DNA of 64,000 bases, taken from positions 132,556,001 to 132,620,000 of the forward strand of contig CM097886.1 in the NCBI GenBank assembly GCA_044892525.1, read 5' to 3'. The notes under the pieces were generated by a model. That model was not told the origin of the DNA, searched no databases, and saw only the letters and a list, made by a program, of their open reading frames with translations. Made by a program: the position numbers and the translations under genes. Shown one piece after another: positions 1,901 through 57,689 of this stretch (within the stretch, counting starts at the first letter, position 1; each line of letters begins with the position of its first letter). The DNA is from Schmidtea polychroa. Its lineage: Eukaryota.

Positions 1901-4900
1901 CCAGAGTGCTCTGAACCACGTGTTTAATTATCCACTGTGGAGTGTACTACTGGTAGCAGAGTAATTTTTAGTTGAATCCCAAAGATTACTACATATAGCC
2001 TGTAGTTAATCCAGCACTGGACCATGTACTGGAAGAACTATGAAACTGTTTTAATCAAGACAAAAATTCTGTCACTCTGGACATTTTAACTTGTCACGCA
2101 CAAAGTTAGAAAATTAAATGAAAATTTAACAACAAAAATGGCAAATAAAATTGATAAAAAAATTTAAATCGAAATTAAATAGAATTAAAATAATTCAAAT
2201 TTGTTTTACTACCTCAATGCACACAGACAAATTTTCACAGAAAAATTAGACTATAGAAGCAGAAGCATTTGGGTAGACTCTAATTTATTTTGTATTACAT
2301 ATATGGTTTAACATAAATTACAAGTTTTATTGCTGTTTTTGATTTTTGTTTTTCTAGTTTCACTAGATGAGATGATTTCCAATAAATAATAACTTTTTCG
2401 GCCCACAACCACCATCATAAACTGTAAGTCAATGAGAAAGTAATACATTATGACTTACGAGGAGTTGTATGCAGTTTATCTGCACAGTTCACAATGTAGC
2501 TCCTTACACCAATGTGGACGTTAGTTAGTGAAGAAAGGAATGCTGTCGAGCTCGGATGTCTACTAGTGGAAGGACTTCACGACTTCGTGTTATGCTCACA
2601 ATAGGTAAGACGAGTAACCGTGGAACAATAATGTACAAGATCTAAAATTTAAATAAGGAGATCGAGAACTGCGTCAAGCTTTTTAGTTTATTCGTAGCTC
2701 CAAGTTCTCAAATATAACATATAAGGACTTTTCACATTAGTGTCCTGTATGCCATGTGGGGCGACCAACTTTTATTTAAAGGACTCATAGTTCACCACCG
2801 ACACACATATGTAAACTTTACATTAAATTGTGATGAATTTTATAAATAAAACACTACAATATCGTCCCCCTAATGTCCTGTGAGCTGTGGTAGCAAGTAA
2901 TTAAAATCTAACATGACTTAAGTTCTCAACAAAAGAATAAAAATGGTAAAATCTTTTTGTTATGCGAATAGTTATCGTTTATCGATGACGAGGACAACCC
3001 TAATAAAACAGATTTACGATCTATTACACATCGTTCTAGAGTGATTATCTGACTTTAAAATTCGGTAATGCTAGAATGATCAGACTTTCATACATAGATT
3101 ACAACTCATTGACTCTTAACGATGTGGCAGTAAAAGGGAAAGATAAATGCTGAAAGATAAGGGCAGATCCCTGCTCAAAGTTTTTATACTAACATTGAAC
3201 AACATTATTGCAAGAAACTTAAGACAAAACCTTCAAACGGGAAAATAAGGGTGGATCCCTCCGCAAAATGTTTTGAAGCATAGTATAATATCAAGTAATG
3301 AGGGAACTCAGCATGTACTGATCGTCATGAAAAATATAATTCCATTATAAATTTGTGAGTCTCGTAATCGAGTAAATGGATGGTCTTCTAGCGAGTACGG
3401 TAGAATTTCTGTTTAAATCTTGTCATTTGAAAATTTTTGATAGGAAGAACTTTAGTCAAAACGCTAGATATTAGAGTTAAATTAGTGAAAATATTAAATT
3501 AACTTCAATATTCTCGCAATGACCATTAGCACCGAAAATCGTAAATTTGATGACCTAGTCGCTGTGAAGCAAACCAAACATTTCTTTAATTTTCCTGTAA
3601 ATAACATCCGAGAGAGCCACAGATAAAAGGCATGACTATTAAATCTGGGAGCTACTAGAATCTACACGAGTAGGCCATTATGCGCAATTTGAAAAAAGCC
3701 TTTAATTTTGATGTCAAATAAAAAGGTTTATTGAAAAACTGTCAACTTTTACTTTTTATTGAGATTTAAAATAAATTATCATATTTTAAATAAATCAATA
3801 CCGGGATTATAGTACAAAGGTACACTCACTTTTCAGGAGCATTCACCCATCCGACACTATTCAAATGTTTATCATTCAACGAGTGTCGAATTGTACGGTA
3901 AACCATTGTATTCTGGGTTGATCTGGTGATAACACGACAAGGTAAATGTGTTTAGCCATATTAAAATATTAATCTCATCAAAATAGATACTTTCAGTAAT
4001 TATTATCACATTCACGTGTTTTATATAAATTTGTTCATTATTAGTTCACACAAAGCATGTTAACATTAAGATAAAATCTAAAGCGGAGCTTAAATTTTTT
4101 GGAGATTCAAAAAGTATTTAAAATCTAGTTATAATATTATGAAAGCCCAGGCAAACTCTTACAACTTAAAAAAAGAGATTTCTTTTGAAAAGCACCAACT
4201 CAAAGTATTTCTGTCGATCAACACTCCTTTATTTCACTTTAATGATCCAGAATTTTAATCACTTTTCAGTCATTTTGGAGTAAAATTCTACATATTTTGG
4301 CAATAATTTGTTGGCCGAAATCAATAATAAGTAACAAATATTCAGTTCAAATTATTTTTGCAGGATTAATAACATATCATTTGAAAATTTATTTAATTAA
4401 CAAGAGGGAATTGAAATGTGACCAGTCCATGAATTCTTATTTGGTTTTACAATTTGCTTCTGATGCTTTAACAAAGTATAAAATTGGGTTTGATAAGGTG
4501 AGCTTATTACTATCGGGCGCAGCTAAGTATATAATCAAGGCAGGAATAGAATATAAAGAACTCGCAATAAACTCTTTATATAACTTGCTTCGCTCATTAA
4601 ATTCATAATTGTGGAATAAATAAAGTCATATCGTGTTAGCATGAAATTAAACAATTGGTAGTTCATTGTCAGTAATAGTCAATTTTGCTCAAATCAGCCA
4701 TTTGCTACCATAAAAATTTACAAGTAATAGAAATTATAAACGAAATTGACTTTATTGAGATATTTCTATTACTCCTATTGTCATCATCAATGAACCTGGT
4801 AATTTCCCGCGAAGTGCTGAGTAAAAGAATTTTCTTTTATCAATAAAGTACTAACTTAAACTTTCACCAGCTTCCAAATTTAGGGAAGTCATTCTTGATT

Positions 4901-4923
4901 TTCTCTCATTTCTTTAATAGATA

Positions 4924-5275
4924 CCATGCTACCTATGCACGCTCCGATAAAAATTCACAGCTAGCGCTGGTCAAGGAGAATCTTCTGCTTCATGCCAAGA
5001 TCAATCGTCTGGAGAGCACGTGGTTTTCATCTCTCCACAGATGCAAGAAAAGATAAAGGAAATCCACCGTCTTGAGCACTGCAGGAACAGTCTCATTTCG
5101 GAAAATATGGAACTTAGGGCTTTGTACCAGGTGTATACTGCCAGAGTACTGGGTTCTTGGGTATCTGGTTACAAAGCCATGGCCAGTAATACTGTCGACT
5201 AGCAACTAGTGCCCGACGTTCTCGCTCCGTCAGTCTGTGCAGGGTGCTCATAGTCAATATATTCCGCCGCCCCTG
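4924..5275 (+). pseudogene. Degenerate, isolated copy of the EGTWFSP coiled-coil family
   Basis: Frameshifted fragments PCYLC / SDKNSQL...INRLESTWFS / MQEKIKEIHRLEHCRNSLISE align with PCFSCADKN...LYEGTWFSP...KILRLEHCRDSLLEE of ORF 18242. Confidence 0.7.
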
Positions 5276-9870: not shown

Positions 9871-10195
9871 GGACGACATTCCAGAATCACTTCTAACCGA
9901 AACTCTACAGGAACCACTTTACAACCGACCCGAACTAAATAGCAGCGTAACATTTGTACTTACAACTCGACAACAACATTTACCAGGATCCAACTAAGCC
10001 AAGGAAGAAATTCGATTAAAATCTGATACTCGAAAGCCTGATTTTCTATACTCTCGAAGGGAATCTTTAGTAAGTATGTTGACTCATTGAATTTTAGTTG
10101 AATTTTATTATGATGCGACTGCAAATCAAAAGTCAAAAACATTTTAGTTCAATAAAATTTTATTTATGACACGACGACTCTCTTTCTCTATGGTG

Positions 10196-12359: not shown

Positions 12360-14880
12360 ATAATAATATTACAACATTAGGAATATATGGTCAGAGAGAG
12401 TTTAGATTTTAATTTTTAAAGTATTTTAGTTATTTATTGGATTTATTTACTGGAGGATATTTATATATTTGATTAATAATAGTAAATAATATAGATAATA
12501 GCCATAGTACACAAATAGAATAGGATAATGCTCTGAGTATATATTATATATCAATATCTGGGTTTCAAGATTGGTTTACCAAGAGACAAAGAAAATTGTA
12601 GAGGGGTGATATATAATAACCATAGAATACAAATAAATAAAAGATGCTTTGACTACAAAAAGATAAATATATAAGTATAATTAATTTTTATAAATATGTT
12701 GACGATATATGTGGTAGCTGCTATTGATTGCAGCTACGCAAGCTTTTTTGGCTAGTTCCTTTATTTCATTATTGGATAAGCCGATAATTTTAAGTATCGA
12801 GTCATTATTTTTGTCCCATGAACCAAGGGTGCCAACTACCAGGGCATGTAGAGTGTGTGGGCATTTATGGAGTCTACCTATTTCCTCTCCTAGTTCCTTA
12901 TATTTATTATAGTTATTTCTCCTAGAGTTGTCGTAGTTTTCTCTGGAGTCGAAAGGAACCTTAATGTCTAAGATATGGATAGATTTGTTACGCTTAGATT
13001 TTAGAAGAAGATCGGGCTTAAGGGTGGAATTGGTACCTTCAGGTACTTTCTCTATGTCTACTTCATAGTTAATAGATATAAAGAAGTTTGCCACAGTTTC
13101 TAGGACATTATCATGCTTATTTCGTCTTGCATTAATACGTGCTTGGCAATGATTAAAGATGTGTGCAGGTGTTTCTGGGTGGGCATGGCAGTGCCGGCAG
13201 AGTATAGATTTATTAGTCTTTAGGCGGTGTGGTGAGTAGTTCAGTTTTAGAAGGTTGTTGCGTGCGCGAATAAGAAAGAGGAATTGGGCATCAGGAAGGA
13301 TGTCACTTTTAAAGAAATAGTCGGCGATGTTGCTTTCGCTAATTGCCTTTGCCATATAGCCCTGGCATTTCATCGCACACCAACGTTCAGCATGAATAAG
13401 GCCAATAATAGAGTGTAGTTCAGCTGAGGTTCTATCCACATTACCGAGGGAGAAGTAATTGATACGACTCTTATATTTTATTTCAAGCTGTAGAAGGTCC
13501 TCAAGCATTACAATTTTGGTAGATATACCGTAGTTATGAAGCAGACGACGGGCGGATTTTTTAAATTTTGAGAAGATGGAGAAAGTTGGGTAGCTTTTAG
13601 AGAGTTGGCCATTCAGCCAGGACAGTGCCACATTTAAATCTCCTTGTCCCCTAGCCTCGATAAGTTCAGCAGTAATGAGAGTCTTAAAGTTAAGATCGCT
13701 AGAGTTTAAAGCCCTGATAAGTTGTACGATGCTTTGAATAAGGTATTCGTCAATGGATGATACAAGTCCAAGACCACCAAGCTTGCAAGCTGCATATAAG
13801 AAGTTGTCATTCAGCTGCATTATCTTATCTCCAATGGATCTTTTAATACCCTGTTTTATTTGCAGGTCGAATCCATATTGTTGTATTTCAGAGTTACGAA
13901 GGATGTTGCGCGGAGAGTCAAGGATGTTGTGGTTAATGACACAATTTCTAAAAGTAAAGTTCAAGCGGGAGTGGATGAATACTTTAAAGGCATTAATTTT
14001 TTGCGAAGGATGTAGATGAGAGTTGAGAATTTTGTTTGTGTCTATAATAGCGGAGTCTAGTCTTTCTTTGATACAGTGTTTAGTTTTATGGGAGAAGTCA
14101 ACTCCAAGATATCTGTACATATTAGAATCATCAATTTTTGGAAGGGTTTCGCCATAGAGTAGAATAGGTTGGTAGTTGCAGTCGTGATCAACATGAAAGT
14201 ATCCGGATTTCGAGGGTTTAAAGCGTAGGTTGACCTTTGTTGCAAGGGAGACAGTGAGAGATAGGGCCGACTTGATATTGGAGTAGGAATCAGATATAAG
14301 CACTATATCATCGGCATACGCAAGAATGCTAATGTTGTGATTATGAAAGAGAAACGGGTGAGTTTGTAAGACATTGCGGAGTATGAAGTCAATGGATAGA
14401 CAGAACAGAGTCATGGACAAGGGGCAGCCTTGTTTCACACCTTTATAAATTGGTGTATAATCAGATTTTTCTCCCTCACATTCAAAGTAAGTTTGTACAT
14501 TGTTGTACATGTCCTGAAGAAGAGCAATAGTGGTGTTGTGTTGCCTAGAGAAATCCATTAGTATTACTACATCTACTGATTCATGCACACATTAACCTTA
14601 GGTTTTGGCGGACTCGAATACAGTAAGTAGATTACTGCCACTATTACATACTCATAGAAGGTGAGGAAGCGAGACTACTTGTGTGATCAGACAGTGAGAT
14701 TACGTCACCCTTGAACACTACGAAGTTCTAGATTGTTCAATAGTACCCACTGAGGATTTATCCGGTAACGCACATATTCCATCAGAAATAGAATCGTTCG
14801 CCAACATACATCTACGAGGAAAATAAAACATACTGGCACACAGCTAGGTGTAGTCATGACGATATTGATAGCGCAGGATT
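12360..14880 (-). mobile_element. Extent of the RLE retrotransposon copy
   Basis: Broken RT-like frames continue upstream (CWRTIL, WVLLNNLELRSVQG, LLTVFESAK); the 3' region runs into the N-gap. Confidence 0.55.
12681..14588 (-). CDS. RT-CCHC-RLE ORF of an R2-superfamily non-LTR retrotransposon (NeSL/Utopia-like), 5'-degenerate
   Basis: RT motifs GVKQGCPLS, LAYADD, YRYLG; HPSQKINAFKVF; zinc knuckle CRHCHAHPETPAHIFNHC; RLE core KHDNV...KPDLL...ILDIKVPFD...NKYKEL. Confidence 0.9.
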   Translation of the reverse strand: MHESVDVVILMDFSRQHNTTIALLQDMYNNVQTYFECEGEKSDYTPIYKGVKQGCPLSMTLFCLSIDFILRNVLQTHPFLFHNHNISILAYADDIVLISDSYSNIKSALSLTVSLATKVNLRFKPSKSGYFHVDHDCNYQPILLYGETLPKIDDSNMYRYLGVDFSHKTKHCIKERLDSAIIDTNKILNSHLHPSQKINAFKVFIHSRLNFTFRNCVINHNILDSPRNILRNSEIQQYGFDLQIKQGIKRSIGDKIMQLNDNFLYAACKLGGLGLVSSIDEYLIQSIVQLIRALNSSDLNFKTLITAELIEARGQGDLNVALSWLNGQLSKSYPTFSIFSKFKKSARRLLHNYGISTKIVMLEDLLQLEIKYKSRINYFSLGNVDRTSAELHSIIGLIHAERWCAMKCQGYMAKAISESNIADYFFKSDILPDAQFLFLIRARNNLLKLNYSPHRLKTNKSILCRHCHAHPETPAHIFNHCQARINARRNKHDNVLETVANFFISINYEVDIEKVPEGTNSTLKPDLLLKSKRNKSIHILDIKVPFDSRENYDNSRRNNYNKYKELGEEIGRLHKCPHTLHALVVGTLGSWDKNNDSILKIIGLSNNEIKELAKKACVAAINSSYHIYRQHIYKN

Positions 14881-16192
14881 TGGATAGTTATACTGCAATT
14901 TATAATAATATATTAAACCAATATATTTTTCGATTTTCTTTCTTTTTTATAGATCTGTTCAGACTCAATACAGCGCAAATAGATACCGACAACGTCGAAC
15001 TATTGTCCCGTAGCCCGCGCTCACGTGACTCAACAAAACATAATAATAAACTATAACCATCATCTCATGGGAAATACAGTAGAGAGGATAGAATTTTTAG
15101 AAATGAAGGAGTAAGCGTGTATTAGATGGGGATTTGCCAGTCGAATAATGGACCTAAAGTTGAGTTTATGTTAAACAAAATAATTATTATGAGTGTTTCC
15201 GATTTTTTTTTCTTTCTTCCTAATTTGCATGGATGGAGAGGATCAATTTGAATGCTTGTGAGTGAACGGGTATGGATGGAAACAAAGGGTATAAATGTGT
15301 TGGGCTAAATTTTGAAGTGGAGAAAACTGGATCAAATAGAGAAGCGAACCTCGAAAAAATAAACGAAATACGATAAAAAATAAATTACCATCAAATCTCA
15401 GTAGTAAATAGGGAGAAACAATAAAATACCAATAAAAGAAATAGGAATAAGTAACCAAAATGAATAAAACCCCTAAGATTTGGAAATAAGACAAAAGGGA
15501 AATGATTTAAAGCACACAGCGGATAAAGTAGAAATAGAATAAGCAAAAAAGTGAGAAAAATAAACGAGATATTAAAGAAATAAATAAAAATAAAACCATC
15601 CTTAAGTCTAATTAAAACAAAAAATTATATTACAATAAAGTAGCAATAAATCCGCAGAAAAAATAGGAGAAAAAATAACAAAAATAAGAAAATGAATAAA
15701 ATAATAATAAGAAATAAGTTAAGTCATTAATTATAATAAAAACATAAAAATAATAATAAATAACGAAATTACAAACAAGTCGTGTCCTGATTGGACGAAA
15801 AATAATATATAAGGAACGGAAAATATCTGTAGAGTACCACTTTTAAAAAATACTCTACAGGTAAAATTTTGTTTGTTATTGCACTACTTTTAAAAAATAC
15901 TCTACAGATTTTACAGACTTCGGAATATTTAACTAGATCATCCTACAGCGAACTATTTCAGAGACTACGAAACCAAATCTAGGAAGGAATATATAGTAAT
16001 CAAACGACAAGTCTATTCAGGACAACTTCCAAATTCAATCGATTTAATCCAGTTTTCGAAACCCGAGGTATGTCTCAGCAGTTGGTTTATGTATGGTTGT
16101 TAGTTTAATTTAGTTAATTTTTGTAAATATAATTAAAAAACAATTTCATGCAATAAATTTATTTAAATGAAAAACAGTCTTTCTTCATGGTG

Positions 16193-16428
16193 CCGGCGAC
16201 TGTACCATCTGGGAGCTTCAGGTATGATGTGGACGAGCAAGAGGTATGTCACGGTGGAGAGCACGGCCACGAGGAATTTTCATAATATGCATCCAGAAGA
16301 TGTTGCAAAATTTAGATACTTAGAGAAAACGATAATAGTTTATGAGGTGTTCACCAACGTTGCGATCAAACGTGCGATTGTATGGAAGAGAGACATCATA
16401 CTTGGAGCCCAAATGATATGGTCGCCGG
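16193..16428 (+). other. Long stem-loop, homolog of 10196-10396
   Basis: Arms 16193-16230 / 16393-16428 give about 34 bp (ccggcgac/gtcgccgg, ggtatgatgt/acatcatact). Confidence 0.75.
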
Positions 16429-16527
16429 GTAAATTTTATTTATTCATTTACCCATCATTCATTTTTGATCATTATATAAATTTTGCACAAATTGTTGATC
16501 TAACTGAATGGAAAAGAGTTGATTGGT

Positions 16528-16589
16528 CCCTCATGACGGTGCAAGAGCGGCGGCAGAAATGAATGCCATTCTTGGGTGTGTCATGAGGG
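16528..16589 (+). other. 62-nt hairpin, homolog of 10527-10588
   Basis: ccctcatgac/gtcatgaggg, a compensatory C-G to A-T change relative to copy A. Confidence 0.75.
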
Positions 16590-17929
16590 GTGAAGAAACT
16601 CAGGAGGTCGAAATCCAGTTGAGAAGTGAAATTTCCTTCATCGAGTGCGATCGTTTATGGAGCATCCCATCGTTTCATTCAGTCACACTGAGATCTCTAA
16701 CAGTTGTAAAGAGGATTTAAATTTCAAAGGAGGATAATTCAGATTGAGATTGATATCGATGTTCATACTGATTTGATAAGAATCCACATAAATAGAAGAA
16801 ATTTTTATTATACTCAGCCTGTCAGTCAACGTAGTTAGGAAGAGCACTTGTCGACCATAGTTTGCAAGAAAATCCAACAATTTTTCTGTAAGGTATTGCA
16901 TTCTCGAGGATTCTATCTGATTTGTGTCGCCAGGACGCTAGCGTCTACATCCATCGTCGATGTACGCTTAAAATTGAACTGTTGTCCTTGAATTGCCGAT
17001 ATCAGTGATAAGTAATTTCTCTCTGACGGGGAAGTAAACATCTCGCAACAAAATTATCAAAATACTCACTTTAAGCTCGAAGGAGATAGTTGCCAACGAT
17101 AACAAAATTCGTCGAATTATCTTAGCCAGCTTGGAGTTAGCCGACGTGGATAGCTGATAATGTCTTGGAAGGGGAGATAGTGTATCGGTTTTCTGGTAAG
17201 AATTGTCGATCGAATGAGTCGATAATCGTTGCCCTAAATCAACATCGTAAAAATGAGTTGGATAATAGAATCAAGCTTACGCAGTAACTTCACTGATTTG
17301 TCGCCTATTCATGATGCTTAATCTGATTCTCCCGATCTGTCTACGGCTGCTGCTTAGTTAAGGAAACTATTATGCAATCCATATTATTCTGACTTAGGAA
17401 TGCACATACACACGTACACACCCGTCAATTCTGCACAAGGCAGCATAAAGATAAATCTACGATTAGGGCAGAAAATATTTTGGTGATGTAATGATTGTGT
17501 GATAGCATGAATTGTCACAAGACAGTGAGACGGTAGGCAGGAGTAAGGGAATGGATTTCCTCAACTCAACTTGACATTTAAGAACCTCTCCTAATCGTAC
17601 AAACAATTGTTCGATGTAATAGCCAATACAAAACTGCAGATGCAGCCAGGAGTATCCGCACACCTAAATGTCCATTCATAATGCATGACTACAGGTAAAC
17701 GTCTCCATGACGACGATTACGACACATTATTTAAATTAATTAGATTTTAATTTAGAGCTTAATTTTAACTAATTTTTGATTATTTTTATAATTTTGAGTG
17801 AGTAAAAAACATAAGTAACTATCAGCCGCCGCGAATTAATTTTCTATAATTTTATGTACGCCTACATCGACAGAAGACTGCAACGAGATCGGAAAAATTT
17901 TAATAATAAAGACATAATAAGGGGAACCA

Positions 17930-18130
17930 GGTTGAAGGGAATAGAGGAAAGAACGAGTTTTTTATGGAGATTGTCCAATCCGAAAGTAAATCCTAGGGGT
18001 GAGGCTTAGATAGAGAGAATTATTTGCGTGAATCACCCGTTTTCTTTTCTTAATTTACATGGGTTGGGTGAAGTAATTTGAATGCTTACAACTAAACGAC
18101 TGTGAATAGGGATGGATGATGAGATCTGTG
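17930..18130. repeat. Third partial fragment of family 2
   Basis: ttcttttcttaatttacatgggttgggtgaagtaatttgaatgctt (about 18040-18090) matches ctttcttcctaatttgcatggatggagaggatcaatttgaatgctt (about 15210-15260). Confidence 0.5.
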
Positions 18131-18241
18131 GGCTATCGCTGTATGGAATGTTTGATGAAACTACGAACCCATGTCCCAAAAAATTGACTATATCATACTA
18201 ATAAATGTTTCGAATAAACATAAAAATGATTGACTTTCTAG

Positions 18242-18991
18242 ATGACTACACCGTCCAACAATGCCAAAGAACTTCGCCCGTGTTTTTCTTGCGCTGACAA
18301 GAACGCGGATATCGCCCAACTTCACTTGTATATCGGGGCCCTCAAGAAGCGGATAGACCTCTATGAAGGGACGTGGTTCTCCCCGCTACAGATGAAGGAG
18401 GAGCGAAGTAAGATCCTCAGATTAGAGCACTGTAGAGACAGCCTCCTGGAGGAGAGCCGCTGCCAAAGACTCACAATAAAGGCCCAGTCCGAAGCCCTCC
18501 ACAAGGTCTATACGGAGGCAGAACTAGCCAAACGGGTGCGCGAATTTCCCGTCTTGGATGGAACAAACGTTTTCCCTCTCCACCACCAGTCCTCTACATC
18601 TTCCACCTCAAATTGCCAGGGGCATGGCTCACATCTGCCGCCCATCCCAGGCCCAGTACTGTCGGGTTATCGACTAATGGCAGGCGGTTCTTCTGACCCA
18701 ATTCTTGTGGCACCTACCGCCACTACGGCTGTAGGGGATAATCTGCCGCCCCGCAAACGCAAGCGACCAACCAGAGCTGAGAAGAATCAAAAACGCAGAG
18801 ATGCAATGGCAGCACTCGAGGCGTCATTATCTGCGGCGCAGTCGAAAATAACAGAAATATCGTCCACCCATTCAATCCCCACGAAAGAAGTTTTTCGCAT
18901 TGTCCCGGCCGAAGGTATCAAATTTATATCGGACTGTCGGCTACCTGTCGATATCGATGCGATGATTTCCGAAGGAGAAAGTTTCGCGTAA
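18242..18991 (+). CDS. Novel 249-aa protein (CxxC, coiled coil, EGTWFSP, basic NLS-like PPRKRKRP)
   Basis: Intact ATG-TAA ORF, GC-richer than host DNA; the tandem paralog differs mainly at synonymous sites. Confidence 0.85.
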   Translation: MTTPSNNAKELRPCFSCADKNADIAQLHLYIGALKKRIDLYEGTWFSPLQMKEERSKILRLEHCRDSLLEESRCQRLTIKAQSEALHKVYTEAELAKRVREFPVLDGTNVFPLHHQSSTSSTSNCQGHGSHLPPIPGPVLSGYRLMAGGSSDPILVAPTATTAVGDNLPPRKRKRPTRAEKNQKRRDAMAALEASLSAAQSKITEISSTHSIPTKEVFRIVPAEGIKFISDCRLPVDIDAMISEGESFA

Positions 18992-19164
18992 TCCAGCTTA
19001 CGGTCGATCTCGATTCTTTCTTTCGAATTGTAAATTGATTTTCGATGTCGAAAAACTGACAGCCTTGTGTATTTGCAACTGATGTAGATTCTGTTAATTT
19101 AGTAATAGTTGTGTGTAATTTTGTTATGGCTTTAATATATTTTGTTTAATTCCGTTGTAGTAAC

Positions 19165-19525
19165 TCTTCAAAACGCATGATTGTGTAATCTGAGTGACTA
19201 GGAGGATGATGTGGAATGAAAGTAATTAGGGTGAAGGTCGTTCCCTTGGACCAGGATCGGACCGAGATATATGTATGAATGTGGGTAAGTCCTTCTAAGG
19301 CACCGTGGAACCCGAACCGCGAGTGGGTTAGCAGTAGTCCTAAGGCAGGGGCTCACCTGTTAACCAACTCCAACCCGTGTGGGCAGCACCAACGTGGAAC
19401 ATCGCCACGGGCTCACATGAGGGAATATTCATGAAGTCATTTGGAGTATGATCGGGGAAAAGGCCGAGTCGAATGCACGTAATCATAATTCTGGTAACAA
19501 ATATTGTTTTCTCCCCTCATACTCC
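19165..19525. other. Conserved non-coding module 1 downstream of the EGTWFSP ORF
   Basis: Aligns with 20550-20938; 32-nt identical core gtagtcctaaggcaggggctcacctgttaacc (19334-19365); shared hairpins. Confidence 0.75.
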
Positions 19526-19643
19526 AACAATTGTCTGTAAGTGGAATGAGTAGGGGTAATGCCGGACCCGTAAATTTTTATTGTTTTTATAAATCTCGCG
19601 TAAACAGTTTCACGAATTTGGATAAATACTTCTTGATCTTCAG

Positions 19644-20406
19644 ATATCTGCAAAATCCAATACCAATCAAGAGCATCGTCCGTGTTTTTCTTGCGCAGAC
19701 AAGAATGCGGATATCGCCCAACTACATCTATACATCGGGGCACTCAAGAAGCGGATAGATGTATATGAAGGTACGTGGTTCTCCCCGCCACAGATGAAAG
19801 AAGAACGAAGTAAGATCCTGAGACTGGAGCATTGTCGCGACAGCCTTCTGGAGGAGAGCCGTTGCCAGAGGCTGACAATAAAAGCCCAGTCGGAAGCCCT
19901 CCATAAGGTTTATACGGAGGCCGAGCTAGCCAAACGGGTACGAGAATTCCCCGTCCAGGATGGGGCGAACGTTTTCTCCCTTCATCATGGGCCATCTGAA
20001 TCTTCCACTTCAAGCTGTCAGGGGCATGGTCCCCATCTGCCGCCCATTCCGGCCCCAATACTATCGGCTTATCGGCCAATCGACCCTCTGATCCGATCCT
20101 GGCCCCAATCCTCGTGACCCCCGTTGAAAACCCTTCAACAGGAAACATTCAGCCACCTCGTAAGCGGAAGCGGCCAACCCGATCAGCGAAAAATCAAAAA
20201 CGCAGGGACGCAATGGCCGCCCTCGAAGCGTCATTGTCAGTGGCGCAATCAAAATCAACGAGATATCTTCCACGCATTCAATTCCCACCAAGGAGATCCT
20301 CAAAATAATTCCGGCAGAAGGAATTAAATACGTTTCTGATCATTACCTACCTGTCGACATCGACGAGATGATTGCCGAAGGCGATGGCTTTAGTGAGCAA
20401 CTGTGA
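19644..20406 (+). pseudogene. Tandem paralog of 18242-18991 with lost start and two frameshifts
   Basis: ATA (19644) sits at the ATG position; frameshifts near 20075 and 20250; restored C-terminus EISSTHSIPTKEILKIIPAEGIKYVSDHYLPVDIDEMIAEG matches the intact copy. Confidence 0.85.
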
Positions 20407-20549
20407 TCGGTCCCGATCTTCTCTCGTGAACTGACATTGTAAAAGCTGATGGTGTTGTATATAAATATTGAAGGAATCGATGTGTTGATGTTGTAAATGA
20501 TCCCTCGTAATAAATTAATTTTCAATACAAATTTTTGACTTCTTTTGGT

Positions 20550-20938
20550 TATTCTCAACGTGCATGATTCGTAATCTGTTTGAATGCAAGCGTGTTGTAG
20601 AATGATGGTGATTAGGTTTACGGTCGTCCTTTTGGACCAGGGGCGGACTGAGTTACACGTATAGAAGTGGGTAAGACCTTCTAAGGTAAAACCTTCTAAG
20701 ACCTTCTAAGACACCGTGGAACCCGAACCGAGAAGTGGTTAGGAGTAGTCCTAAGGCAGGGGCTCACCTGTTAACCTCTTCCAACCCGTGTGGGCAGTAC
20801 CAACGTGGAACATCACCACGGGCCCATACGTGGGAATATTAGTAAGATCATTTGGAGTATGTCAGGGAAGGGCCTGAGCGGAACGACGATGATTTGTATG
20901 TTTGGTAACAATGTTAATCTTTTTCCCCCGCATACACC
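20550..20938. other. Conserved non-coding module 2
   Basis: Core at 20745-20776; extra local duplication of accttctaag. Confidence 0.75.
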
Positions 20939-21878
20939 ATTAATATAAAATATAAAAGCATTACCAAAAGAAAATACTAAACTTTATTCTTAACGAAATG
21001 TAAATGTGTATTTGATATAAACTATAAAGCAAAAGTACCAGCAAAGAGTCGTATGACAATCCCTCAAAAGTCAAAATCGGCCATTCCCACCAAACGTACC
21101 TGAAATTGAAAATTTATTGTTAATAAATAAATTACTTCCAAGCTAGCCAAAGAAGATTACACCACTCACGACGCGCACAACCGAGGGAGAAGTAAGTAAA
21201 ACGAGAAACTAAGCTCGTCACTAATACTTATTGCCCCAGTGTACCCGAATTTAGTGGTAAATTACCAAAATGGTCTGATTTCATAAATTCGTAGAAAAAT
21301 TAATGTATTAAATTTTGAATTACCATCTAGTGGTAAACAAGATTCTGAAAATTTAAATGATTAAATTAAACAAAGTTAATTGTTAATCAATTTTAGGGTA
21401 TATTTAGTTAAAGTGTAAGATTTACTAGAAATTTACTCAGGACTATGGAATTTCTCTTTAATTAAAAATTAATTTCGGAAATACAGGTTGTAATTGCAGT
21501 CGTTTCTCTAGTCATACAACTTCATTAAATTTTTTAACTAAGTTACAACTATCGAAAATGATTAACTTTGAATGCAAGGTTTTAATTATGAACTCCGTTG
21601 TCCGAGGCCCTTCTTCCGTACGACCTGATCATTATTTTGTAGATTTCTTAATTAAAATATTTTTCAAATTATGTAAATTTCATTTTATAATTAAAAATTC
21701 TGGCAACTACCCACTATTTCCGTCCATCTACCTATGTCCTCGTTGAGTATTTAGAACACTTAGGGGGAGTGATGGCAGAATGAGTTAGTAGGTTTGGGAA
21801 GTAGTCAGTGAAATTCTTGTGCTAAAAGACTCATATCAGTCTTTGTAAGGTGTCCTGATTTCGATTTGTATTGTAGAA

Positions 21879-22235
21879 ATGTCACACTCTGGCGATTATA
21901 GCGATGATGAAGCCTACAGACAAATGATTACGCGGCTCCGGACCCGGTACCCGATTCATGATTGGAATCGGGGGCTGGACTTGGTTAATTACGGCCCGGT
22001 TATCCGGAGTGGCCCAGAGCCCGACGCTCCGGCGTGGGTGAAGAAGGAGCCCACTAACGACTTGTTACGAGAGGCCCGCGATTGAGTGGTTATCGAAGTG
22101 GAGGCTGCCCAAATGCGGCTGAAGAAAATCGAGCTCCAGCTCCGGGCCGAAAAGGAAGGAGTGCCGCTAGAAGAGCTGGAGGATGTAGAAGCGCCCCCAC
22201 GGAAGCGAGGGAGGCCCCGTAAGAACCCAGCATAA
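21879..22235 (+). CDS. GC-rich ORF ending in an AT-hook (RKRGRPRK), with one internal TGA at 22083
   Basis: MSHSGDYSDD...LLREARD*VVIEVEAAQMRLKKIELQLRAEKEGVPLEELEDVEAPPRKRGRPRKNPA; the frame stays open after the TGA. Confidence 0.6.
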
Positions 22236-22493
22236 TCCATCGACAATTTTCCTGCATTTATGACTTGAATTGAACATTTGACTTGTTTAATTGGTGATAC
22301 TTTCTTTGATTTGGTTGTAGTTCGTGTAATAAATTATTTCTTTGTCAAATTATTGGCTTTATAGATTATGGTGTATTCTTGTGATTTAGGAGACCTTTTT
22401 TTAACATCCAACTAATAATTTACGATGAAATTAAACGAATCACCTTTATGTACATGGAAGTGAGTCATAGAATTTGATTGTTGTCTTCATTCA

Positions 22494-22931
22494 GTGTTCA
22501 AATTACTCGAAAATTTACGCAAGGACCGTGAGCAGGCCCAACAACAAGCCGAAGACCTCCGAGGCCGAGTCGAGAAATTCAAAGTGAGGTGCCGAGAACT
22601 CGAGGGCACTTGGTTCAGTCCGGCCGAGATGAAAAAACGAACGACACACATCTTGCAACTCCAGACCCAGGCGGAGCAGGATCAACTGGAAATACGGGCA
22701 CTGAAGTTACAAGTGCGCACGCTCGAGAGCAAACTGAACGAAAGGTTCATTCAGGACACTCTCCGAGAGCAGATTCGCCCGTTACCCGTGGAGCTGGCCA
22801 AGATATACCCACCGGCCCAGGCAAGCAAGCCGAAATGCAAACGGCTAGGGCGGAATACCCGAGAAAAATTGAAAAGGGCCTGGCTGGCCGAACAGGAAAA
22901 GCTGAGAGTCCGAGGCCGCCCACGATCCTGA
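22494..22931 (+). CDS. Diverged EGTWFSP-family coiled-coil protein (probably a 3' exon)
   Basis: CRELEGTWFSPAEMK matches IDLYEGTWFSPLQMK; heptad pattern; starts at a ttcattcAG acceptor with no ATG; ends RGRPRS. Confidence 0.7.
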   Translation: MFKLLENLRKDREQAQQQAEDLRGRVEKFKVRCRELEGTWFSPAEMKKRTTHILQLQTQAEQDQLEIRALKLQVRTLESKLNERFIQDTLREQIRPLPVELAKIYPPAQASKPKCKRLGRNTREKLKRAWLAEQEKLRVRGRPRS

Positions 22932-23059
22932 AGGGTAATTGAGAGTGCGACCCCTCCTGGGTAAAACGGATATTGTAACATTGTGATGCCTAAATAAATA
23001 ATTTTCACCATCTGATGTGTATGTAGTTGAATCTTATGATTGTTGAAATTCGTCTTTTT

Positions 23060-24158
23060 TTACATGACAAAAAAAATATTTACAGAGCTTACCGATACTA
23101 GATGGTTACTAATGTTAATGTTCTTAACTGATTTTACTATACATTTGAATGAATTAAACAAGAAACTTTTTAGCACTCACCCTTTTGATACAGTATCATC
23201 GTTGATCACTCAACGGGTATCAAGCGGAGAAACATTCGTTTGTATTCTGGGTTACGCTGGATACAGCGCGAATAGGGAAAATGAGTGCTTGCCTGTAACC
23301 CACCAAAAACTTCAAATGGAAAATAATGAAAAACTGAAGGAATAAGGTGTGTGTTTCTTGTTTAGTCTCAACCGGATTGGGACCAAATCCTTTTAATAAA
23401 TTTTGATCATGCATTCCACTCTTTAAAACCGATAGAAACGGCCCTTCTATGTGAATTCTCACTTAGTATTTTATAGGTCTTCGACAATATTCCATTTTTT
23501 GACACAACAAGTGTTGGACAGAAACCTGTCACGCCGAATTTAACGAGATTCTTACTAACTACTTTTAAACTAGTTTCAAGCTCCTGTGATAAATCGGAAA
23601 AGTTATATCTGTATCCACCATTAATCTGAATATCGATGAATCCTGGAGATAAAATTGGACTCTGACTATCTTTAACGACATCAGGAGCTCATTTGTCGAC
23701 ATAAAACTGCTCTGAATCTTGAATAGCGCCATCTCTGATCCATAAATCATCCACAATAATTTTGGAATTCAAACAGAGAGAGCAATTAGTAAATTTAATA
23801 AATTGATTTGAAAAAGAAAATTGATGGAAATCTTCAATTTTGTTAACTATCATTACCAAAGTTATTCAGAGTAGGAAAATATTTTCTAGTAAATTATTTT
23901 ACATATATGTATAGTAAAATACACTCAGTTCCACAAGCAAATTCAAAAACAAATATTTTAGCTAAATTCTATATTTTTAAATTCTACACAACTTCCAATT
24001 CAAAGAAGAAATTAATAAATTTAAACAAATCAAAAAAACATAAAATTTTCGAAAAATCTCAAATCAAAGTAAATTAATTATTATTCTTCAACAGTGTGCA
24101 ATGAAAAATTTCAGATAAGGTCAATGTGCCATGAGCTAAAAAAGGTTGAGAACCACTG
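23060..24158 (+). mobile_element. Fragments of a Buster/Charlie-type hAT element
   Basis: ELTDTRWLLMLMFLTDFTIHLNELNKKL (GTF2IRD2-like) and a terminal ggttgagaaccactg at 24144-24158. Confidence 0.45.
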
Positions 24159-25795
24159 CGCTAGAAGTTGCAACATTATTATTTATGTAAGTGTGATGAA
24201 AATAACCACATAAAAACAAACAAAGGTGATTCCAGATGGATTTCAGTTCGAGTCCTCACTGACAACGACACGCTGCTAGTCAACAAGCAAGTGACCGAGC
24301 CGACGAAGAAGTTTTTACACCCCAATCGTTGCCCGCTCACCTGCCTACTCATAGATTATAACTATACGATTTTACTATTATAAAAGGTTATCAGAGAGTC
24401 ATTACTTATGCTTCAAAATATAAAAATATACAATACTACTATTATAGAAAGTTATTAGAAAATCATTAATTATATAGCAAAATACTCAACAAGGGAGAAC
24501 AAACTATTAAAATTTTAAATGATTTTAATTTTAACATAAAATTACATGGAATTATAGACCAAATATAAAAATTTTAATTTACAAAATTACCAATAATGCT
24601 CCACAGGTTCAAAAATAATATAAATGACTGAATTCGCCACTGGCAATTTAAATTCTCCTCTTGAATAAATGTCGAGATTTGAGGAGCACAAAAAATTTCT
24701 TCTAGAAATAGTCGTGCGATTCAAACTTAACTTGAATAGTCGTAAGATAACTCTGAGAATGGGAAGTAATGGATCTTTGAAAAATGAAACTAAGTCCAGA
24801 GTTTGAAAATAAGTGGTTTAAATTAGTTGCCAAATACTTCGGTTAGCAAAAAATGGTTGATAATATGTAATGAGAAAAGACAGTAAAATTGTTTTTTGAC
24901 TGAAAAAGTGGATAGAAGTGGATAACTGTGGAAAATAAGTGTTTTTGTGGCTTCTGAGAGACCCGTATATATACTTTTTGGTCTTGTTTTTTTCAACCAA
25001 TCACAATCGAGATTGTGTGTTTTTGGTTTTATTCTTTTAAATTAAATTAAATTAAATTATTTTAATTAATCATTTAATTTTTTCTTTTTTTTGCTTGGTT
25101 GACTGATCGCCTTTTTATACTAATTTTATTTGATAAATAAAATAGTATTTTTTGCTATTTTTGTGTCTTTTCCACGATTTTTGTTATTTTCTTGTCTTTA
25201 AAATGTGCTTCCTGTGCAACTGCTAACATTTATTATTTTATTATTCTTGATTTTAATTATTTCTATTTTTGTTTTATTTTATCTTATTTGATGTTTTTAC
25301 TAGATTTTAATTATTCTTCTTGCTTTTTCTTTGCTGTATGGGTTCTCTCCGTTACCTCTTAGTTCATCAAGTAAAAATAAAGAGAAAAGAAATTTTTTTT
25401 AAAAGAGTAGTTTGATTCTCAGCCCAACACAAGTAATTTTTTATATATTATTTAAATAATAATAATATTAATAATATTCAGGTCCGTATGAAAGTAATAG
25501 CTGCTTTTTCAGAATTCTTGGTATTAAAAATTTGCAAAATTCGCTGTTGAAAAAAAAATTTTATTAATATTTTAAAATATAATCAAATATGATCACATTT
25601 TTTTAGACACTTTGTAGCTTTATATATGCAAGGTAGATACAATCTGATTAGAAAATTCCATTCTCATAGATTTACTCGATAAACTGAATATTGTTTCGCA
25701 ATTTGGAGCAAATTTGTTATGTAATACTGACAAACTGTGAAAAAAATTTCTATTTGAACTCATTACAATAATTCCAATACAAAATCTGTCAAAAA

Positions 25796-26206
25796 ATGCT
25801 TATTAGAAATTCATTGATGCGCTCAGTTACAATTTTCCTTCTGCTATCCTCACTCACCGTCAATAGGTGGAAGTGTGAACAAAACATAAAGATTTTGTGT
25901 TTATTGGAATGGAGAAGTTTATTTTCCATATATTCGTCGACCAGTTTAACAATTGCTTCACTTGTACTTCTCGTCATGGAGTTAATCTTTTTGGTGACAA
26001 GCGTCATTGATATTTGCCTCAATTGGGATTTTAAAGGTTCGGGAAATACATTTTTCATTATAGTAGCCGGAATTTTATTGGTATCAGCGATGAGACAGTT
26101 CGAAATGGATCTTCAAGATTGGATGTTCACATTGAGTTTCTCAACAGCCGTTTGCAGCACTCAGTGCTTCATTTCCCAAATCAAATTCAAATTTGTCATA
26201 AAATAG
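25796..26206 (+). CDS. Small four-TM protein, paralog 1
   Basis: 136 aa, four hydrophobic spans, Arg in TM1, CE..C loop, Glu in TM2, DW before TM4. Confidence 0.65.
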   Translation: MLIRNSLMRSVTIFLLLSSLTVNRWKCEQNIKILCLLEWRSLFSIYSSTSLTIASLVLLVMELIFLVTSVIDICLNWDFKGSGNTFFIIVAGILLVSAMRQFEMDLQDWMFTLSFSTAVCSTQCFISQIKFKFVIK

Positions 26207-55819: not shown

Positions 55820-57689
55820 TTATATAAATATGCATTATTGTATCGTATTTGATTAATAATTGGGTTTGCCTCATTGTGTGGAGTACTTTAAGTTTAGAAT
55901 TAGAGAGATAAAATTATAAAATAAAAACTTATGGAAGTCTTATTTTTAAATATTTTTTAGGTGTAAGTAAAAATATGATTATTCCTGTATACCAACGCAT
56001 TTCAGTCACAATTTTATCGTTTTGTGAGTGATTTTGTGAATTACATTTGTGAACCAAATTTGTGGATCAATTTTTGTTAGTCAAATTTACTATCTGTACC
56101 CATTTGTAAGAATTTGATTGACTTGAAGTAAGGATTTTTGTTTATTGTGTAATCATATTATGATTGAATTACGTCATTGAATAGAGTTTGGTTCTAATAA
56201 AATGTTTTTTACTCTTCTTAGAACGAATTGTTTTCAACTATGTATGATACAAACCTTTTTTGGTCTACAGCCACTTTGTATGAAACGTGGTAGTTGCACT
56301 ACTCCATTTATTTGGAGTAGTTTTATTACGTTTTTTATCGGTAATCTTCCTGTAGCCTGTGTGGACGACGGCTAGAGACTGGCGTTGTCTACATGGGGTA
56401 CACCCATACGGATCCGCACTATGCTTGCAAATGGTAAGCCACGTATCGTAGGATACTACGGGTTGGGGGTAAAATCAATATACGGAGATCGGGAACTGCG
56501 ACAAGCTTTTGGTTTGTTCGCCGTTCCAAAGCTCAATAACATTAAGAGCTCGTCACACTAGAATTAAGTGGGCCTATGGGCGAGTAATTTTTCATTTTGT
56601 AATTTAACAGCATGTAGACAAAAGAACTAATTTTATATCTCATCTACATTTTTTCATTTTTATAGGACACTAAGAGCTCGTTCCTCTAATGCCCAGTGGC
56701 CTAAGAGTAACGAAGAATTAAATTACTTTAGACTCAAATTCCTAATAGAATGCAATAAAAACAAAAGAGTGGTACCGATACTGTAAATCGAAGTCACAGG
56801 TCAGATCATCGTGCTTAAATGAATAAAATAAGGTCAAAATTTTCAAAACATCAATTTTTACTTTAACTTTAAAGAAATATATGAATAAAATAAGTCCGGA
56901 TTCATGCCAAAATTTCAAAACTCAATTTTAACTTTACTTTCAAGGATGCCAATATCTCAATGGGTTCAACTTGTTCATGACTCACATTACTGATAGTCAC
57001 TTTAACACTTTGTCGATATAGTAAAAACTTGGGTATTGTGTGCTCGTGTTTTAAATTTGAGTGCATTTGTGAAAGATTTCCAGTGGGTTAACATCAACTC
57101 ACACCATAGCAGGAGGAATAAGTCATTTGGAAGCAGATTTTCCAAGGTTCGCGTCATTGAATCATAGAGTAAAGGGACCTAAATGAAGTCGGGCACAGGC
57201 CTTCTATCGATAGCCCTTGAACCCATTCGAATGCTTGACGAGTATTTTCCATGTAATACATTATCAAAGTTGATCACTGAATAAGTGTCGGATGGTTAAA
57301 CAAGTCATTGTATCTTGGGTTGTGTCAGAAATGACACAAACGGTTAAAATATTGATTATCTGCGACCCACCAATAGTATTTGTATCATTGTTCAATGTTG
57401 ACATCACACAGAATATGAAATTACGATTTCTAATTCTCCAAGTTTTAATGTTTTTTGGCAGTATGTTTTAATAATAAATTTTGGAAAATCTTTTGAATAT
57501 TTTAAACTAATAATTATAAATATATATAAGAATTTCAATAATCTTAATAAGTTACTTGCTCACAAATCAAATTATTTGTGAATAAAGGATTTTGAGCGAA
57601 ATTGTAATTATTTTTATTGAAATTTGCTGACTATAAACATTTTTGTGTTGGGTATTGTTCTTTGCTAGCTGAGACAACGGGCTTTAATT

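What the first reader, a model, noticed from the sequence alone, without database searches (positions are those of the whole stretch)
18242..20938. Unassigned 'EGTWFSP' protein family under strong purifying selection, in ~1.4-kb ORF + structured-module units
Seen: two head-to-tail units (ORFs start 18242 and 19644), each an ORF followed by the same ~350-nt non-coding module. Across 93 aligned codons (RPCFSC...REFPV) I count 2 amino-acid changes against about 31 synonymous codon changes, so the protein was constrained. Layout: CxxC, coiled coil, EGTWFSP, second coil, S/P-rich linker, PPRKRKRP, conserved C-terminus. Further relatives occur at 4924 and 22494. The ORFs are visibly GC-richer than host genes such as SNF8. 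I recognise no transposase, RT, gag or capsid motif. Inference: a non-host mobile or virus-like unit, or a young lineage-specific nuclear protein family, possibly undescribed.
Basis: partly seen in the sequence, partly recalled or inferred. Interest (0 to 1): 0.82.

Follow-up and report, generated by a model that had tools for sequence, protein, structure and literature searches.

The report
Orphan coiled-coil gene plus RNA hairpin
A small, GC-rich, intron-less gene for an unannotated nuclear-type coiled-coil protein sits here in several same-strand copies, each followed by a conserved RNA hairpin module, and the evidence cannot yet say whether it is a lineage-specific host gene family or a low-copy selfish element.

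Summary
Two head-to-tail units (18242-19527 and 19644-20939) share a 249-codon ORF and a roughly 350-nt non-coding module. In the 93-codon core I count 2 amino-acid changes against 31 synonymous codon changes (dN/dS 0.014). Copy A is intact; copy B is broken.

New here:
- The protein has no Pfam, PDB or fold match.
- It has about 15 relatives. All are UniParc-only gene models, each fused to a different host gene.
- A covariance model built from modules A and B alone finds a third module just downstream of the divergent third ORF (22494-22931), with compensatory stem changes. ORF and hairpin are therefore an old linked pair.
- Two ORF-less module relics lie at 3.8 kb and 57.3 kb.
- Every copy is on the + strand.
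- Four of five ORF starts are directly preceded by splice-acceptor-like sites.
- GC3 is about twice that of the host SNF8 gene.

No ribozyme, rod-like fold, RT, transposase, terminal repeat or CRESS-type origin was found.

Best reading (0.45): a lineage-restricted, probably flatworm, multigene cluster encoding a nuclear Arg-rich coiled-coil protein, with a 3'UTR hairpin the protein may bind. Rivals are an ORF1-only retroposon-like element (0.3) and a virus-derived insert (0.08). The family is undescribed and of moderate interest.

The parts
18242..18991 (+). ORF A: intact 249-codon member of the 'GTW-x-x-P' family. It has a helical hairpin with EGTWFSP at the turn, an S/P-rich disordered linker, the basic cluster PPRKRKRP followed by a basic helix, and an acidic LPVDID tail.
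   Evidence: AG at 18240-18241 lies directly before the ATG.
18992..19175 (+). AT-rich first part of the 3' non-coding region of unit A. It is not detectably conserved with unit B.
19176..19527 (+). Module A, a conserved non-coding element. Its core is 19286-19470. The hairpin with an asymmetric internal loop is at 19374-19423. A long-range terminal stem runs about 19441-19525 and ends in ...CCA.
   Evidence: No open frame is shared by A and B.
19528..19643 (+). Spacer between the units. It has no detectable similarity to either outer flank. It ends in a pyrimidine tract plus CAG directly before unit B's coding region.
19644..20406 (+). ORF B: a broken copy of ORF A. It has 2 frameshifts (read in three frames), no stop inside the frame-wise matches, and no ATG at the aligned start. 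The first 144 codons are 85% identical to A in protein.
20563..20939 (+). Module B. Its core is 20697-20880 and its hairpin 20785-20834. It carries a 25-nt internal duplication of a CCTTCTAAG motif.
21879..22238 (+). GC-rich ORF fragment (GC3 0.67) upstream of ORF C. It has one in-frame stop, an AT-hook-like PPRKRGRPRK and an acceptor-like site 2 nt before its ATG. It is not a family member by sequence.
22494..22931 (+). ORF C: a divergent 145-codon family member, about 26% identical to A, with an exact ELEGTWFSP motif. There is no ATG before the motif. An acceptor-like CAG ends at 22494.
23137..23434 (+). Module C. 23137-23318 matches the A/B module model, with the hairpin at 23180-23227 and a terminal stem followed by ACCCACCAA. 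The repeat shared with relic E continues to an AATAAA near 23393.
4847..5199 (+). Decayed family copy. It matches in two frames (at least one frameshift), and only the N-terminal part, roughly 110 codons' worth, is recognisable. GC has fallen to 44%.
3831..3982 (+). Module relic D. It is related to module C, has no recognisable family ORF upstream, and its hairpin stems are partly degraded.
   Evidence: (nhmmer E 4e-7)
57235..57512 (+). Module relic E. It is related to module C, including the stretch down to the AATAAA. It has no family ORF upstream, and its stems are partly degraded.
   Evidence: nhmmer E 4e-8

Best explanation
The locus is a cluster of an undescribed, lineage-restricted, intron-less gene unit. 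The lineage is a spiralian, most probably a flatworm.

**The unit**
Each unit looks like a small mRNA cassette:
- a splice-acceptor-like site;
- an ORF for a coiled-coil protein of about 250 residues with an Arg/Lys-rich nuclear-type basic helix and an acidic tail;
- a 3' untranslated region carrying a conserved hairpin module.

**How the copies arose**
The copies arose by DNA-level duplication in place and evolve by birth and death. A is functional. B was recently disabled, or is mis-assembled. C is divergent. The copy at 4.9 kb and the modules at 3.8 kb and 57.3 kb are decaying relics.

**Shown**
- The units themselves.
- Long purifying selection on the ORF.
- Conservation and covariation of the module on the coding strand.
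- The same-strand clustering.
- The acceptor-like sites.
- The absence of any known domain.

**Inferred**
- The protein oligomerises through its helical hairpin, enters the nucleus and binds nucleic acid through its Arg-rich helix.
- Its most likely ligand is the hairpin in its own transcript's 3'UTR, serving autoregulation, export or stability of an intron-less mRNA.
- The acceptor sites take a spliced leader. In flatworms the leader ends in AUG, which would supply copy B's missing start in frame.
- The high GC3 comes either from GC-biased gene conversion in a multigene cluster or from a foreign (selfish-element or viral) origin of the founder gene.
For: **Clustering.** All 4 ORF copies and all 5 module copies are on the + strand, and 4 units lie within 18 kb.

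**Acceptor-like sites.** A YAG with a pyrimidine tract lies within 7 nt upstream of 4 of 5 GC-rich ORF starts. The background is 4.4% per 7-nt window.

**No mobile-element hallmark.** I found no RT, transposase, LTR or TIR, and no tRNA-like or Rfam feature.

**Selection.** Both adjacent copies show dN/dS of 0.014-0.08 at K4 of about 0.68. This is simplest if both were maintained in place.

**The module as a transcript feature.**
- It is conserved beyond silent sites.
- It folds better on the + strand: z -2.1 against +0.2.
- A model built from A and B only recovers module C, 205 nt after ORF C's stop, as the best foreign hit in the window (16.4 bits, E 0.004).
- Fourteen pairs are changed on both sides, and 99% of cells pair against 30-47% in slid controls.
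- Independent MFE folds give the same architecture.
- An AATAAA follows modules C and E.

**Protein features.** AF2 gives the helical hairpin and the basic helix. There is a weak REV (Arg-rich motif) match in 2 relatives.

**Spliced leader.** The 3'-terminal AUG of flatworm spliced leaders is documented in PMC12582326, which cites Cheng et al. 2006.
Against: - GC3 is 0.51-0.63 against 0.27 for the one certain host gene, and 0.32-0.40 for transposon ORFs in the window.
- Relatives in other gene sets are each fused to a different host gene. One pair is 90% identical yet sits next to different host domains. The family has therefore dispersed, at least elsewhere.
- Two ORF-less module relics resemble 5'-truncated copies.
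- Apart from the UniParc-only models, the protein searches returned no family member; none of the hits comes from a transcriptome-derived source. Expression is therefore unproven.
- No transcript data were available, so the splice-acceptor, 3'UTR and protein-RNA binding steps are all inference.
- With only 3 to 5 module sequences, the covariation evidence is limited, and part of it rests on an alignment fitted to the model.
Confidence: 0.45

Rival explanations
1. A low-copy, non-autonomous, retroposon-like selfish unit of the 'ORF1-only' or gag-only kind. The coiled-coil, Arg-rich protein coats its own RNA. The 3' hairpin module is the cis signal read by a reverse transcriptase supplied in trans. 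Head-to-tail pairs and 3' fragments arise from that copying.
For: - Relatives have dispersed next to at least 14 unrelated host genes, including a 90%-identical pair at different loci.
- There are ORF-less 3' relics D and E.
- ORF and 3' module are co-inherited across very divergent units.
- The ORFs are intron-less and GC-rich, unlike the host.
- The dN/dS pattern is typical of divergence along active lineages, with few recent breaks in B.
- Two relatives carry a PPPY motif.
- A non-LTR RT fragment lies in the window.
Against: - No partner RT carries the module: searches with all three models on both strands found nothing near the RT ORF.
- There is no poly(A) or microsatellite tail, and no recognisable target duplication.
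- All copies share one orientation and are clustered.
- The 4.9-kb copy keeps its 5' part and lacks its 3' part, the opposite of what target-primed copying produces.
- Acceptor-like sites sit in the flank of each copy.
- There is no match to any known ORF1 or gag family.
Confidence: 0.3
2. Endogenised copies of an unknown small exogenous replicon (RNA or DNA virus, or satellite) with one protein gene and a structured terminal region. Integration was repeated at this locus, possibly as multimers.
For: - The composition is foreign to the host and the coding sequence is strongly constrained.
- The conserved non-coding module ends in ...CCA.
- The arrangement is head to tail.
- No cellular homologues exist outside a few gene sets.
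Against: - The two tandem copies differ at 45% of 4-fold sites under selection, which a single integrated multimer cannot give.
- The whole-unit circular fold is no more stable or rod-like than shuffles.
- No ribozyme or other Rfam family matches.
- A Rep-type nonanucleotide occurs only at chance level and is not shared by the units.
- No relative turned up in IMG/VR, JGI metagenome or GTDB contigs.
- There is no viral fold match.
- Acceptor-like sites flank the ORFs.
Confidence: 0.08
3. The module is an independent short interspersed repeat that happened to land in, or was recruited to, the 3' regions of these genes. It is not an integral partner of the ORF.
For: - Module-type sequences occur without an ORF at 3831-3982 and 57235-57512.
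- A/B-type and C-type modules are alike only at the structure level.
Against: - Three of the three readable ORF copies carry a module at a similar offset (about 185-295 nt after the stop) on the same strand.
- Modules beside live ORFs keep perfect stems while the solo copies are degraded.
- There is no tRNA-like or other Pol III signature.
Confidence: 0.1

Closest known systems
LINE ORF1p / gag-only non-LTR elements (mammalian L1 ORF1p and HAL1; Drosophila HeT-A) - from my own knowledge
   Same: Both have a small coiled-coil protein with a basic nucleic-acid-binding region, encoded next to a long 3' non-coding region. Both occur as head-to-tail, same-orientation arrays, and the unit itself encodes no enzyme.
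   Different: There is no sequence or fold match to any ORF1 or gag family. There is no poly(A) tail, no target duplication, and no partner RT sharing the 3' end. Acceptor-like sites lie in the flanks. The copy number appears low.
Stringent-type LINE/SINE 3' stem-loop recognition (R2 3'UTR; eel UnaL2/UnaSINE1) - from my own knowledge
   Same: A conserved 3'-terminal hairpin keeps its shape through compensatory changes while the primary sequence drifts. Short copies consist of the 3' end only.
   Different: No RT element carrying this hairpin was found in the window. In the C-type copies the homology runs past the hairpin to an ordinary AATAAA, as in a normal mRNA.
Lentiviral Rev / RRE pair (Pfam PF00424 REV)
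   Same: An Arg-rich motif combined with an oligomerising helical hairpin, paired with a structured RNA element on an RNA that lacks introns. Two relatives give a weak REV match (E 1.3e-3).
   Different: The match is confined to the low-complexity Arg run and falls below any curated threshold. The window's own ORF gives no match. There is no retroviral context. This is an analogy of mechanism only.
Deltavirus-like agents / hepatitis delta antigen (the comparison I had in mind for a 1.4-kb head-to-tail unit with one coiled-coil basic protein)
   Same: The unit length is 1.4-1.7 kb, there is a single small coiled-coil, Arg-rich nuclear protein, and the repeats are head to tail.
   Different: Nothing returned HDAg or an HDV-type ribozyme. 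The unit does not fold as a rod. The copies are divergent and separated by a spacer.
Lineage-specific tandem multigene families with a conserved 3'UTR hairpin (for example replication-dependent histone genes and their stem-loop) - from my own knowledge
   Same: Intron-less, clustered, same-family genes with raised GC, as expected under GC-biased gene conversion, and a conserved 3' RNA hairpin tied to the gene family.
   Different: The protein is an orphan with no known function. The hairpin is far larger and branched. Family members in other species are dispersed.

Membership tests
Non-LTR retrotransposon (autonomous or non-autonomous) | A reverse transcriptase ORF in the unit, or a partner element sharing the unit's 3' end | tested here: not met
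   The units contain no RT. The only RT ORF (12681-14588, minus strand) gives no module match with models R1-R3 on either strand. Part of its 3' region lies in an N run and was not examined.
Non-LTR retrotransposon (autonomous or non-autonomous) | A 3' poly(A) or simple-repeat tail, target-site duplications, and graded 5' truncation | tested here: inconclusive
   There is no tail after the ...CCA ends. Neutral flanks are saturated, so duplications cannot be read. Two 3'-only relics exist, but both start at about the same point.
L1-type ORF1p / retroviral-type gag | Sequence or fold homology (Transposase_22, RRM+CTD, CCHC knuckle, capsid fold) | tested here: not met
   Pfam gave 0 families at E<=1 and a profile search of PDB found nothing. 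Foldseek against PDB and BFVD found nothing below E 0.1.
Deltavirus-like / viroid-like / obelisk-like circular RNA | A rod-like, highly self-complementary unit-length RNA | tested here: not met
   In circular MFE folds of both units on both strands, z lies between -1.4 and +1.1, pairing is 58-62%, and the rod index equals that of shuffles.
Deltavirus-like / retrozyme / Penelope-like | A self-cleaving ribozyme (HDV-like, hammerhead, twister and others) | tested here: not met
   Rfam 15 gave no match at gathering scores across the window, and no ribozyme at E<=5 in 17500-23500.
CRESS-DNA / nanovirus- or satellite-like circle | A Rep gene, or a conserved stem-loop with a NANTATTAC origin | tested here: not met
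   There is no Rep. The motif occurs at chance frequency (21 observed against 20.6 expected), once in unit A and not in unit B.
LTR / TIR / Helitron-type DNA elements | Terminal direct or inverted repeats bounding the unit | tested here: not met
   Only the unit-to-unit repeats were found, and no inverted pair in 16000-25000.
tRNA-derived SINE (for the module) | A tRNA-like 5' part with Pol III boxes | tested here: not met
   ARAGORN found no tRNA-like gene in the window. There is no Rfam match.
Structured cis-acting RNA element (generic) | Base pairs kept through compensatory changes in independent copies, on one strand | tested here: met
   Fourteen pairs are changed on both sides and 99% of cells pair, against 30-47% when slid. 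Six of the 11 pairs of the main stem are compensated in copy C. Independent MFE folds agree. The caveat is that there are only 3 sequences and the alignment was fitted to the model.
Host protein-coding gene family | Purifying selection, expression signals and transcripts | tested here: inconclusive
   Selection is met. Acceptor-like sites and an AATAAA are present. No transcript evidence was available, and apart from the UniParc-only models the protein searches returned no family member from any other source.

The most novel reading that the evidence does not exclude
The ORF-plus-hairpin cassette is a minimal selfish ribonucleoprotein unit of a kind not yet described. It would be a capsid-less, enzyme-less element of flatworms, consisting only of an Arg-rich coiled-coil protein and its cognate RNA hairpin, in the manner of a Rev/RRE pair. 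It would spread by borrowing host or transposon machinery, and it would capture host transcription through its own splice acceptor. That capture would make the many host-gene fusions seen in other assemblies real chimeric transcripts rather than annotation errors.
Probability: 0.12. Interest if true: 0.8.

Novelty: new member of a known kind. Interest (0 to 1): 0.45.

Why it matters
The protein family has no name, no domain assignment and no structure, yet it has been held under very strong constraint for a long time. It travels with a co-evolving RNA hairpin. That pairing gives a concrete, testable protein-RNA hypothesis in a group of animals where orphan genes are poorly understood.

If the units are resident genes, they offer a clean case of a gene-family-specific 3'UTR element and of GC enrichment in an AT-rich genome. 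If they are selfish, they would be an unusually small protein-plus-RNA mobile unit.

Either way, the finding flags about 15 chimeric gene models in public helminth-type protein sets that probably need re-annotation.

Tried and rejected
**Known RNA families.** The Rfam gathering search over the whole window found nothing. The permissive search of 17500-23500 gave only two chance-level matches, mir-44 and sR17.

**Known protein families.** Pfam, NCBIfam and PHROGs on ORF A, ORF C and a relative gave only generic coiled-coil noise. PDB searches by sequence and by profile found nothing. AF2 followed by Foldseek against BFVD and PDB gave no match below E 0.1.

**Relatives elsewhere.**
- The word-indexed search of 5.8 billion proteins found no hit with the single sequence.
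- The exhaustive phmmer search gave 10 true relatives and 1 spurious low-complexity hit, P0001.
- Exact look-ups of ORF A, SNF8, the mariner ORF, a Cys-rich ORF, P0003 and P0004 found nothing on record, so neither the host nor the context of the relatives could be fetched.
- Scans of viral, metagenome and GTDB contigs with peptide and DNA patterns found nothing.

**Circular-replicon ideas.** I tested for a rod-like fold, a Rep-type nonanucleotide and a tRNA-like end. All were negative.

**A coding module.** There are stops in all six frames in both copies.

**Homology of the spacer with the outer flanks.** Undetectable, but uninformative, because even the positionally homologous first part of the 3' region is saturated.

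**Primary-sequence similarity of A-type and C-type modules.** Not significant; only the structure-aware model links them. The reciprocal model built from C, D and E hits module B's hairpin in register, but only at E 0.37. The model built from A, B and C did not recover relic D.

**The GC-rich fragment at 21879-22238.** It is not a family member.

**Bacterial promoter/terminator scan.** Irrelevant for a eukaryote.

**Literature.** Searches found no description of the family.
Full report
**1. What is there**

The window is AT-rich eukaryotic DNA of about 30% GC. Two GC-rich islands stand out, at 18-21 kb and 22-23 kb. The first island holds two head-to-tail units.
- The units align 18267-19526 with 19669-20939 at 72% identity over 1300 nt. 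Start-to-start spacing is 1402-1411 nt.
- Unit A carries an intact 249-codon ORF at 18242-18991.
- Unit B's coding region (19644-20406) is a broken copy. It reads in three frames (two frameshifts), has no stop within the frame-wise matches, and has no ATG at the aligned start.
- Detectable homology is confined to the ORF and to a roughly 350-nt non-coding module (19176-19527 and 20563-20939).
- The first 180 nt after the stop, the 116-nt spacer and the outer flanks are saturated.

**2.

- Over the 93 codons from RPCFSC to REFPV there are 2 amino-acid and 31 synonymous codon differences. This gives dS 0.97, dN 0.014 and dN/dS 0.014.
- The remaining stretches, each analysed in its own frame, give dN/dS of about 0.08.
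- At 4-fold sites 41 of 92 differ, so K4 is about 0.68.
- The module core is 87% identical, and 92% over its first 130 nt. It has stops in all six frames in both copies, so it is a constrained non-coding element.
- ORF GC3 is 0.51-0.63. SNF8 has 0.27 and the transposon ORFs of the window 0.32-0.40.

**3. The protein**

AF2, run with a 13-sequence alignment, gives mean pLDDT 67.6.
- It predicts a confident helical hairpin (helices 17-41 and 48-89, then 92-101) with the invariant GTW..P at the turn.
- A disordered S/P-rich linker spans residues 105-175.
- A confident basic helix (178-209) follows PPRKRKRP.
- A short acidic tail carries LPVDID.

No database recognises it: Pfam, NCBIfam, PHROGs, PDB by sequence or profile, and Foldseek against PDB and BFVD all drew blanks.

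An exhaustive phmmer search of 1.84 billion representatives gave ten true relatives at about 35% identity. A profile search added four more.
- All are UniParc-only gene models.
- Each is fused to a different host domain: SLC6, PTP, furin, actin, MCM, TRAPP, CRAL-TRIO, GLDC, ABC, L21, ankyrin or LSM14.
- They share the core GTW[FT][SA]PE ... R.QR..I..QS ... N.IP..H, then a proline-rich stretch, then an Arg run (RRRRERRR type), and a terminal [FL]PV[DN]ID or PIYIDLE.
- Two of them have PPPY.
- Two give a weak REV (Arg-rich motif) match.
- P0010 and P0013 are 90% identical over 192 residues but sit next to different host domains.

The family is thus old, multicopy and dispersed in at least one other genome. 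SNF8 of the window is at most 56% identical to anything on record. Molluscs, annelids and cestodes rank highest. The host is therefore an unsampled spiralian, and a flatworm is my inference.

**4. The module is a conserved RNA structure linked to the ORF**

With A and B alone the support was weak: plus-strand z -2.1 against +0.2 for the minus strand, and a substitution test at P 0.03.

A covariance model built only from A and B gave more.
- Searched without filters over both strands of the window, its best foreign hit was 23137-23270 (+), at 16.4 bits and E 0.004.
- That hit lies 205 nt downstream of the stop of the third, very divergent family ORF (22494-22931).
- In the main hairpin (A 19374-19423, B 20785-20834, C 23180-23227), six of the eleven outer-stem pairs are compensated in C.
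- The 5' internal loop AG[CU]A[CU]CA[AU] and the inner stem are retained.
- Independent MFE folds give the same architecture.
- On the three-sequence alignment 99% of cells pair, with 14 pairs changed on both sides. Slid controls give 30-47% pairing. The caveat is that this alignment was fitted to the model.
- A long-range terminal stem followed by ...CCA recurs with different stem sequences in A, C and E (and the alignments).
- The reciprocal model, built from C-type copies only, places its best foreign plus-strand hit on module B's hairpin in register, but only at E 0.37.

**5. More copies**

- A profile scan of the six-frame translation finds exactly four ORF copies, all on the + strand: 4847-5199 (decayed), A, B and C.
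- Module C has two ORF-less relatives, also on the + strand, at 3831-3982 and 57235-57512. nhmmer gives E 4e-7 and 4e-8. Their stems are partly degraded.
- The C/E homology continues past the CCA to an AATAAA.

**6. Signals at the 5' side**

Four of the five GC-rich ORF starts have a YAG preceded by a pyrimidine tract within 7 nt upstream. The five starts are A, B, C, the 4.9-kb copy and the unrelated fragment at 21879. The background is 4.4% per 7-nt window. A has TAG directly before its ATG but misses the tract threshold.

In flatworms the spliced leader ends in AUG, which can act as the initiator (PMC12582326, citing Cheng et al. 2006). If the leader were spliced at 19643/19644, it would be in frame with copy B. 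That is inference.

**7. What it is not**

- No Rfam family or ribozyme matches.
- The fold is neither rod-like nor unusually stable as a circle.
- There is no shared Rep-type origin motif.
- There is no tRNA-like gene.
- There are no terminal repeats.
- No relative turned up in viral, metagenome or prokaryotic contigs.

**8. Weighing**

A resident multigene cluster best fits four things:
- the same-strand clustering;
- the acceptor-like sites in each copy's flank;
- the mRNA-like anatomy;
- the lack of any transposon hallmark.

A retroposon-like, ORF1-only selfish unit best fits four others:
- the dispersal of relatives;
- the 3'-only relics;
- the ORF-hairpin co-inheritance;
- the composition.

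An endogenised small replicon explains the composition. It fails on the divergence under selection between the tandem copies, and on every structural test.

I put these at 0.45, 0.30 and 0.08. The remainder covers the idea that the module is an independent repeat, plus unknowns.

The mechanism I commit to is this. An oligomeric, nuclear, Arg-rich coiled-coil protein has as its preferred ligand the hairpin in its own 3'UTR. That mechanism is common to the first two readings and is inferred, not shown.

Noticed in passing
window 12681-14588 (-), with 9430-9825/15531-15907 and 10508-10649/16508-16652: A 5'-truncated non-LTR reverse-transcriptase ORF (RVT_1 plus zf-RVT). It is bracketed by two pairs of direct repeats about 6.1 kb apart (76-78% identical), as if the RT element were itself a partial tandem.
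   Followed up: partly
window 9755-9889: Three tandem copies of a 45-nt unit, with a diverged fourth copy at 15835-15879 inside the 6.1-kb repeat.
   Followed up: no
window 5635-6369 (-): SNF8/EAP30 is encoded as a single uninterrupted 244-codon ORF lying between family copies. Its best database identity is only 56%, so the host lineage is not represented in the protein collections.
   Followed up: partly
window 21879-22238 (+): The most GC-rich ORF fragment of the window (GC3 0.67). It has one in-frame stop, an AT-hook-like PPRKRGRPRK and an acceptor-like site just upstream. It is unique in the window and is not a family member.
   Followed up: partly
window 37233-38363 (+): An apparently intact Tc1/mariner-type transposase ORF (HTH plus DDE_3).
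   Followed up: no
window 34997-36287 (+) and 57874-58233 (-): Pieces of pogo/Tc5-type transposase (Brinker/CENP-B/HTH_Tnp_Tc5 and DDE_1). The second piece lies 360 nt from module relic E.
   Followed up: no
window 59587-60366 (-): A 259-codon ORF with a weak DUF659 (hAT-associated) match.
   Followed up: no
window 25796-26206 (+), 27805-28248 (-), 28681-29091 (+); 29841-30422 and 33827-34333 (+): Two small local families of orphan ORFs, one of hydrophobic 136-147-residue proteins and one of Cys-rich proteins. Three of the five ORFs (one hydrophobic, two Cys-rich) were scanned against Pfam and gave no match.
   Followed up: no
window 61760-62843: A very AT-rich low-complexity repeat that reads as YIFNY...-type ORFs, around an N run.
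   Followed up: no
proteins P0002-P0015 (UniParc-only gene models): About 15 public gene models fuse a family ORF to unrelated host domains. In three of them the in-frame residues just upstream of the unit's own Met are also conserved (IFDN), which suggests a shared acceptor site or 5'UTR.
   Followed up: partly
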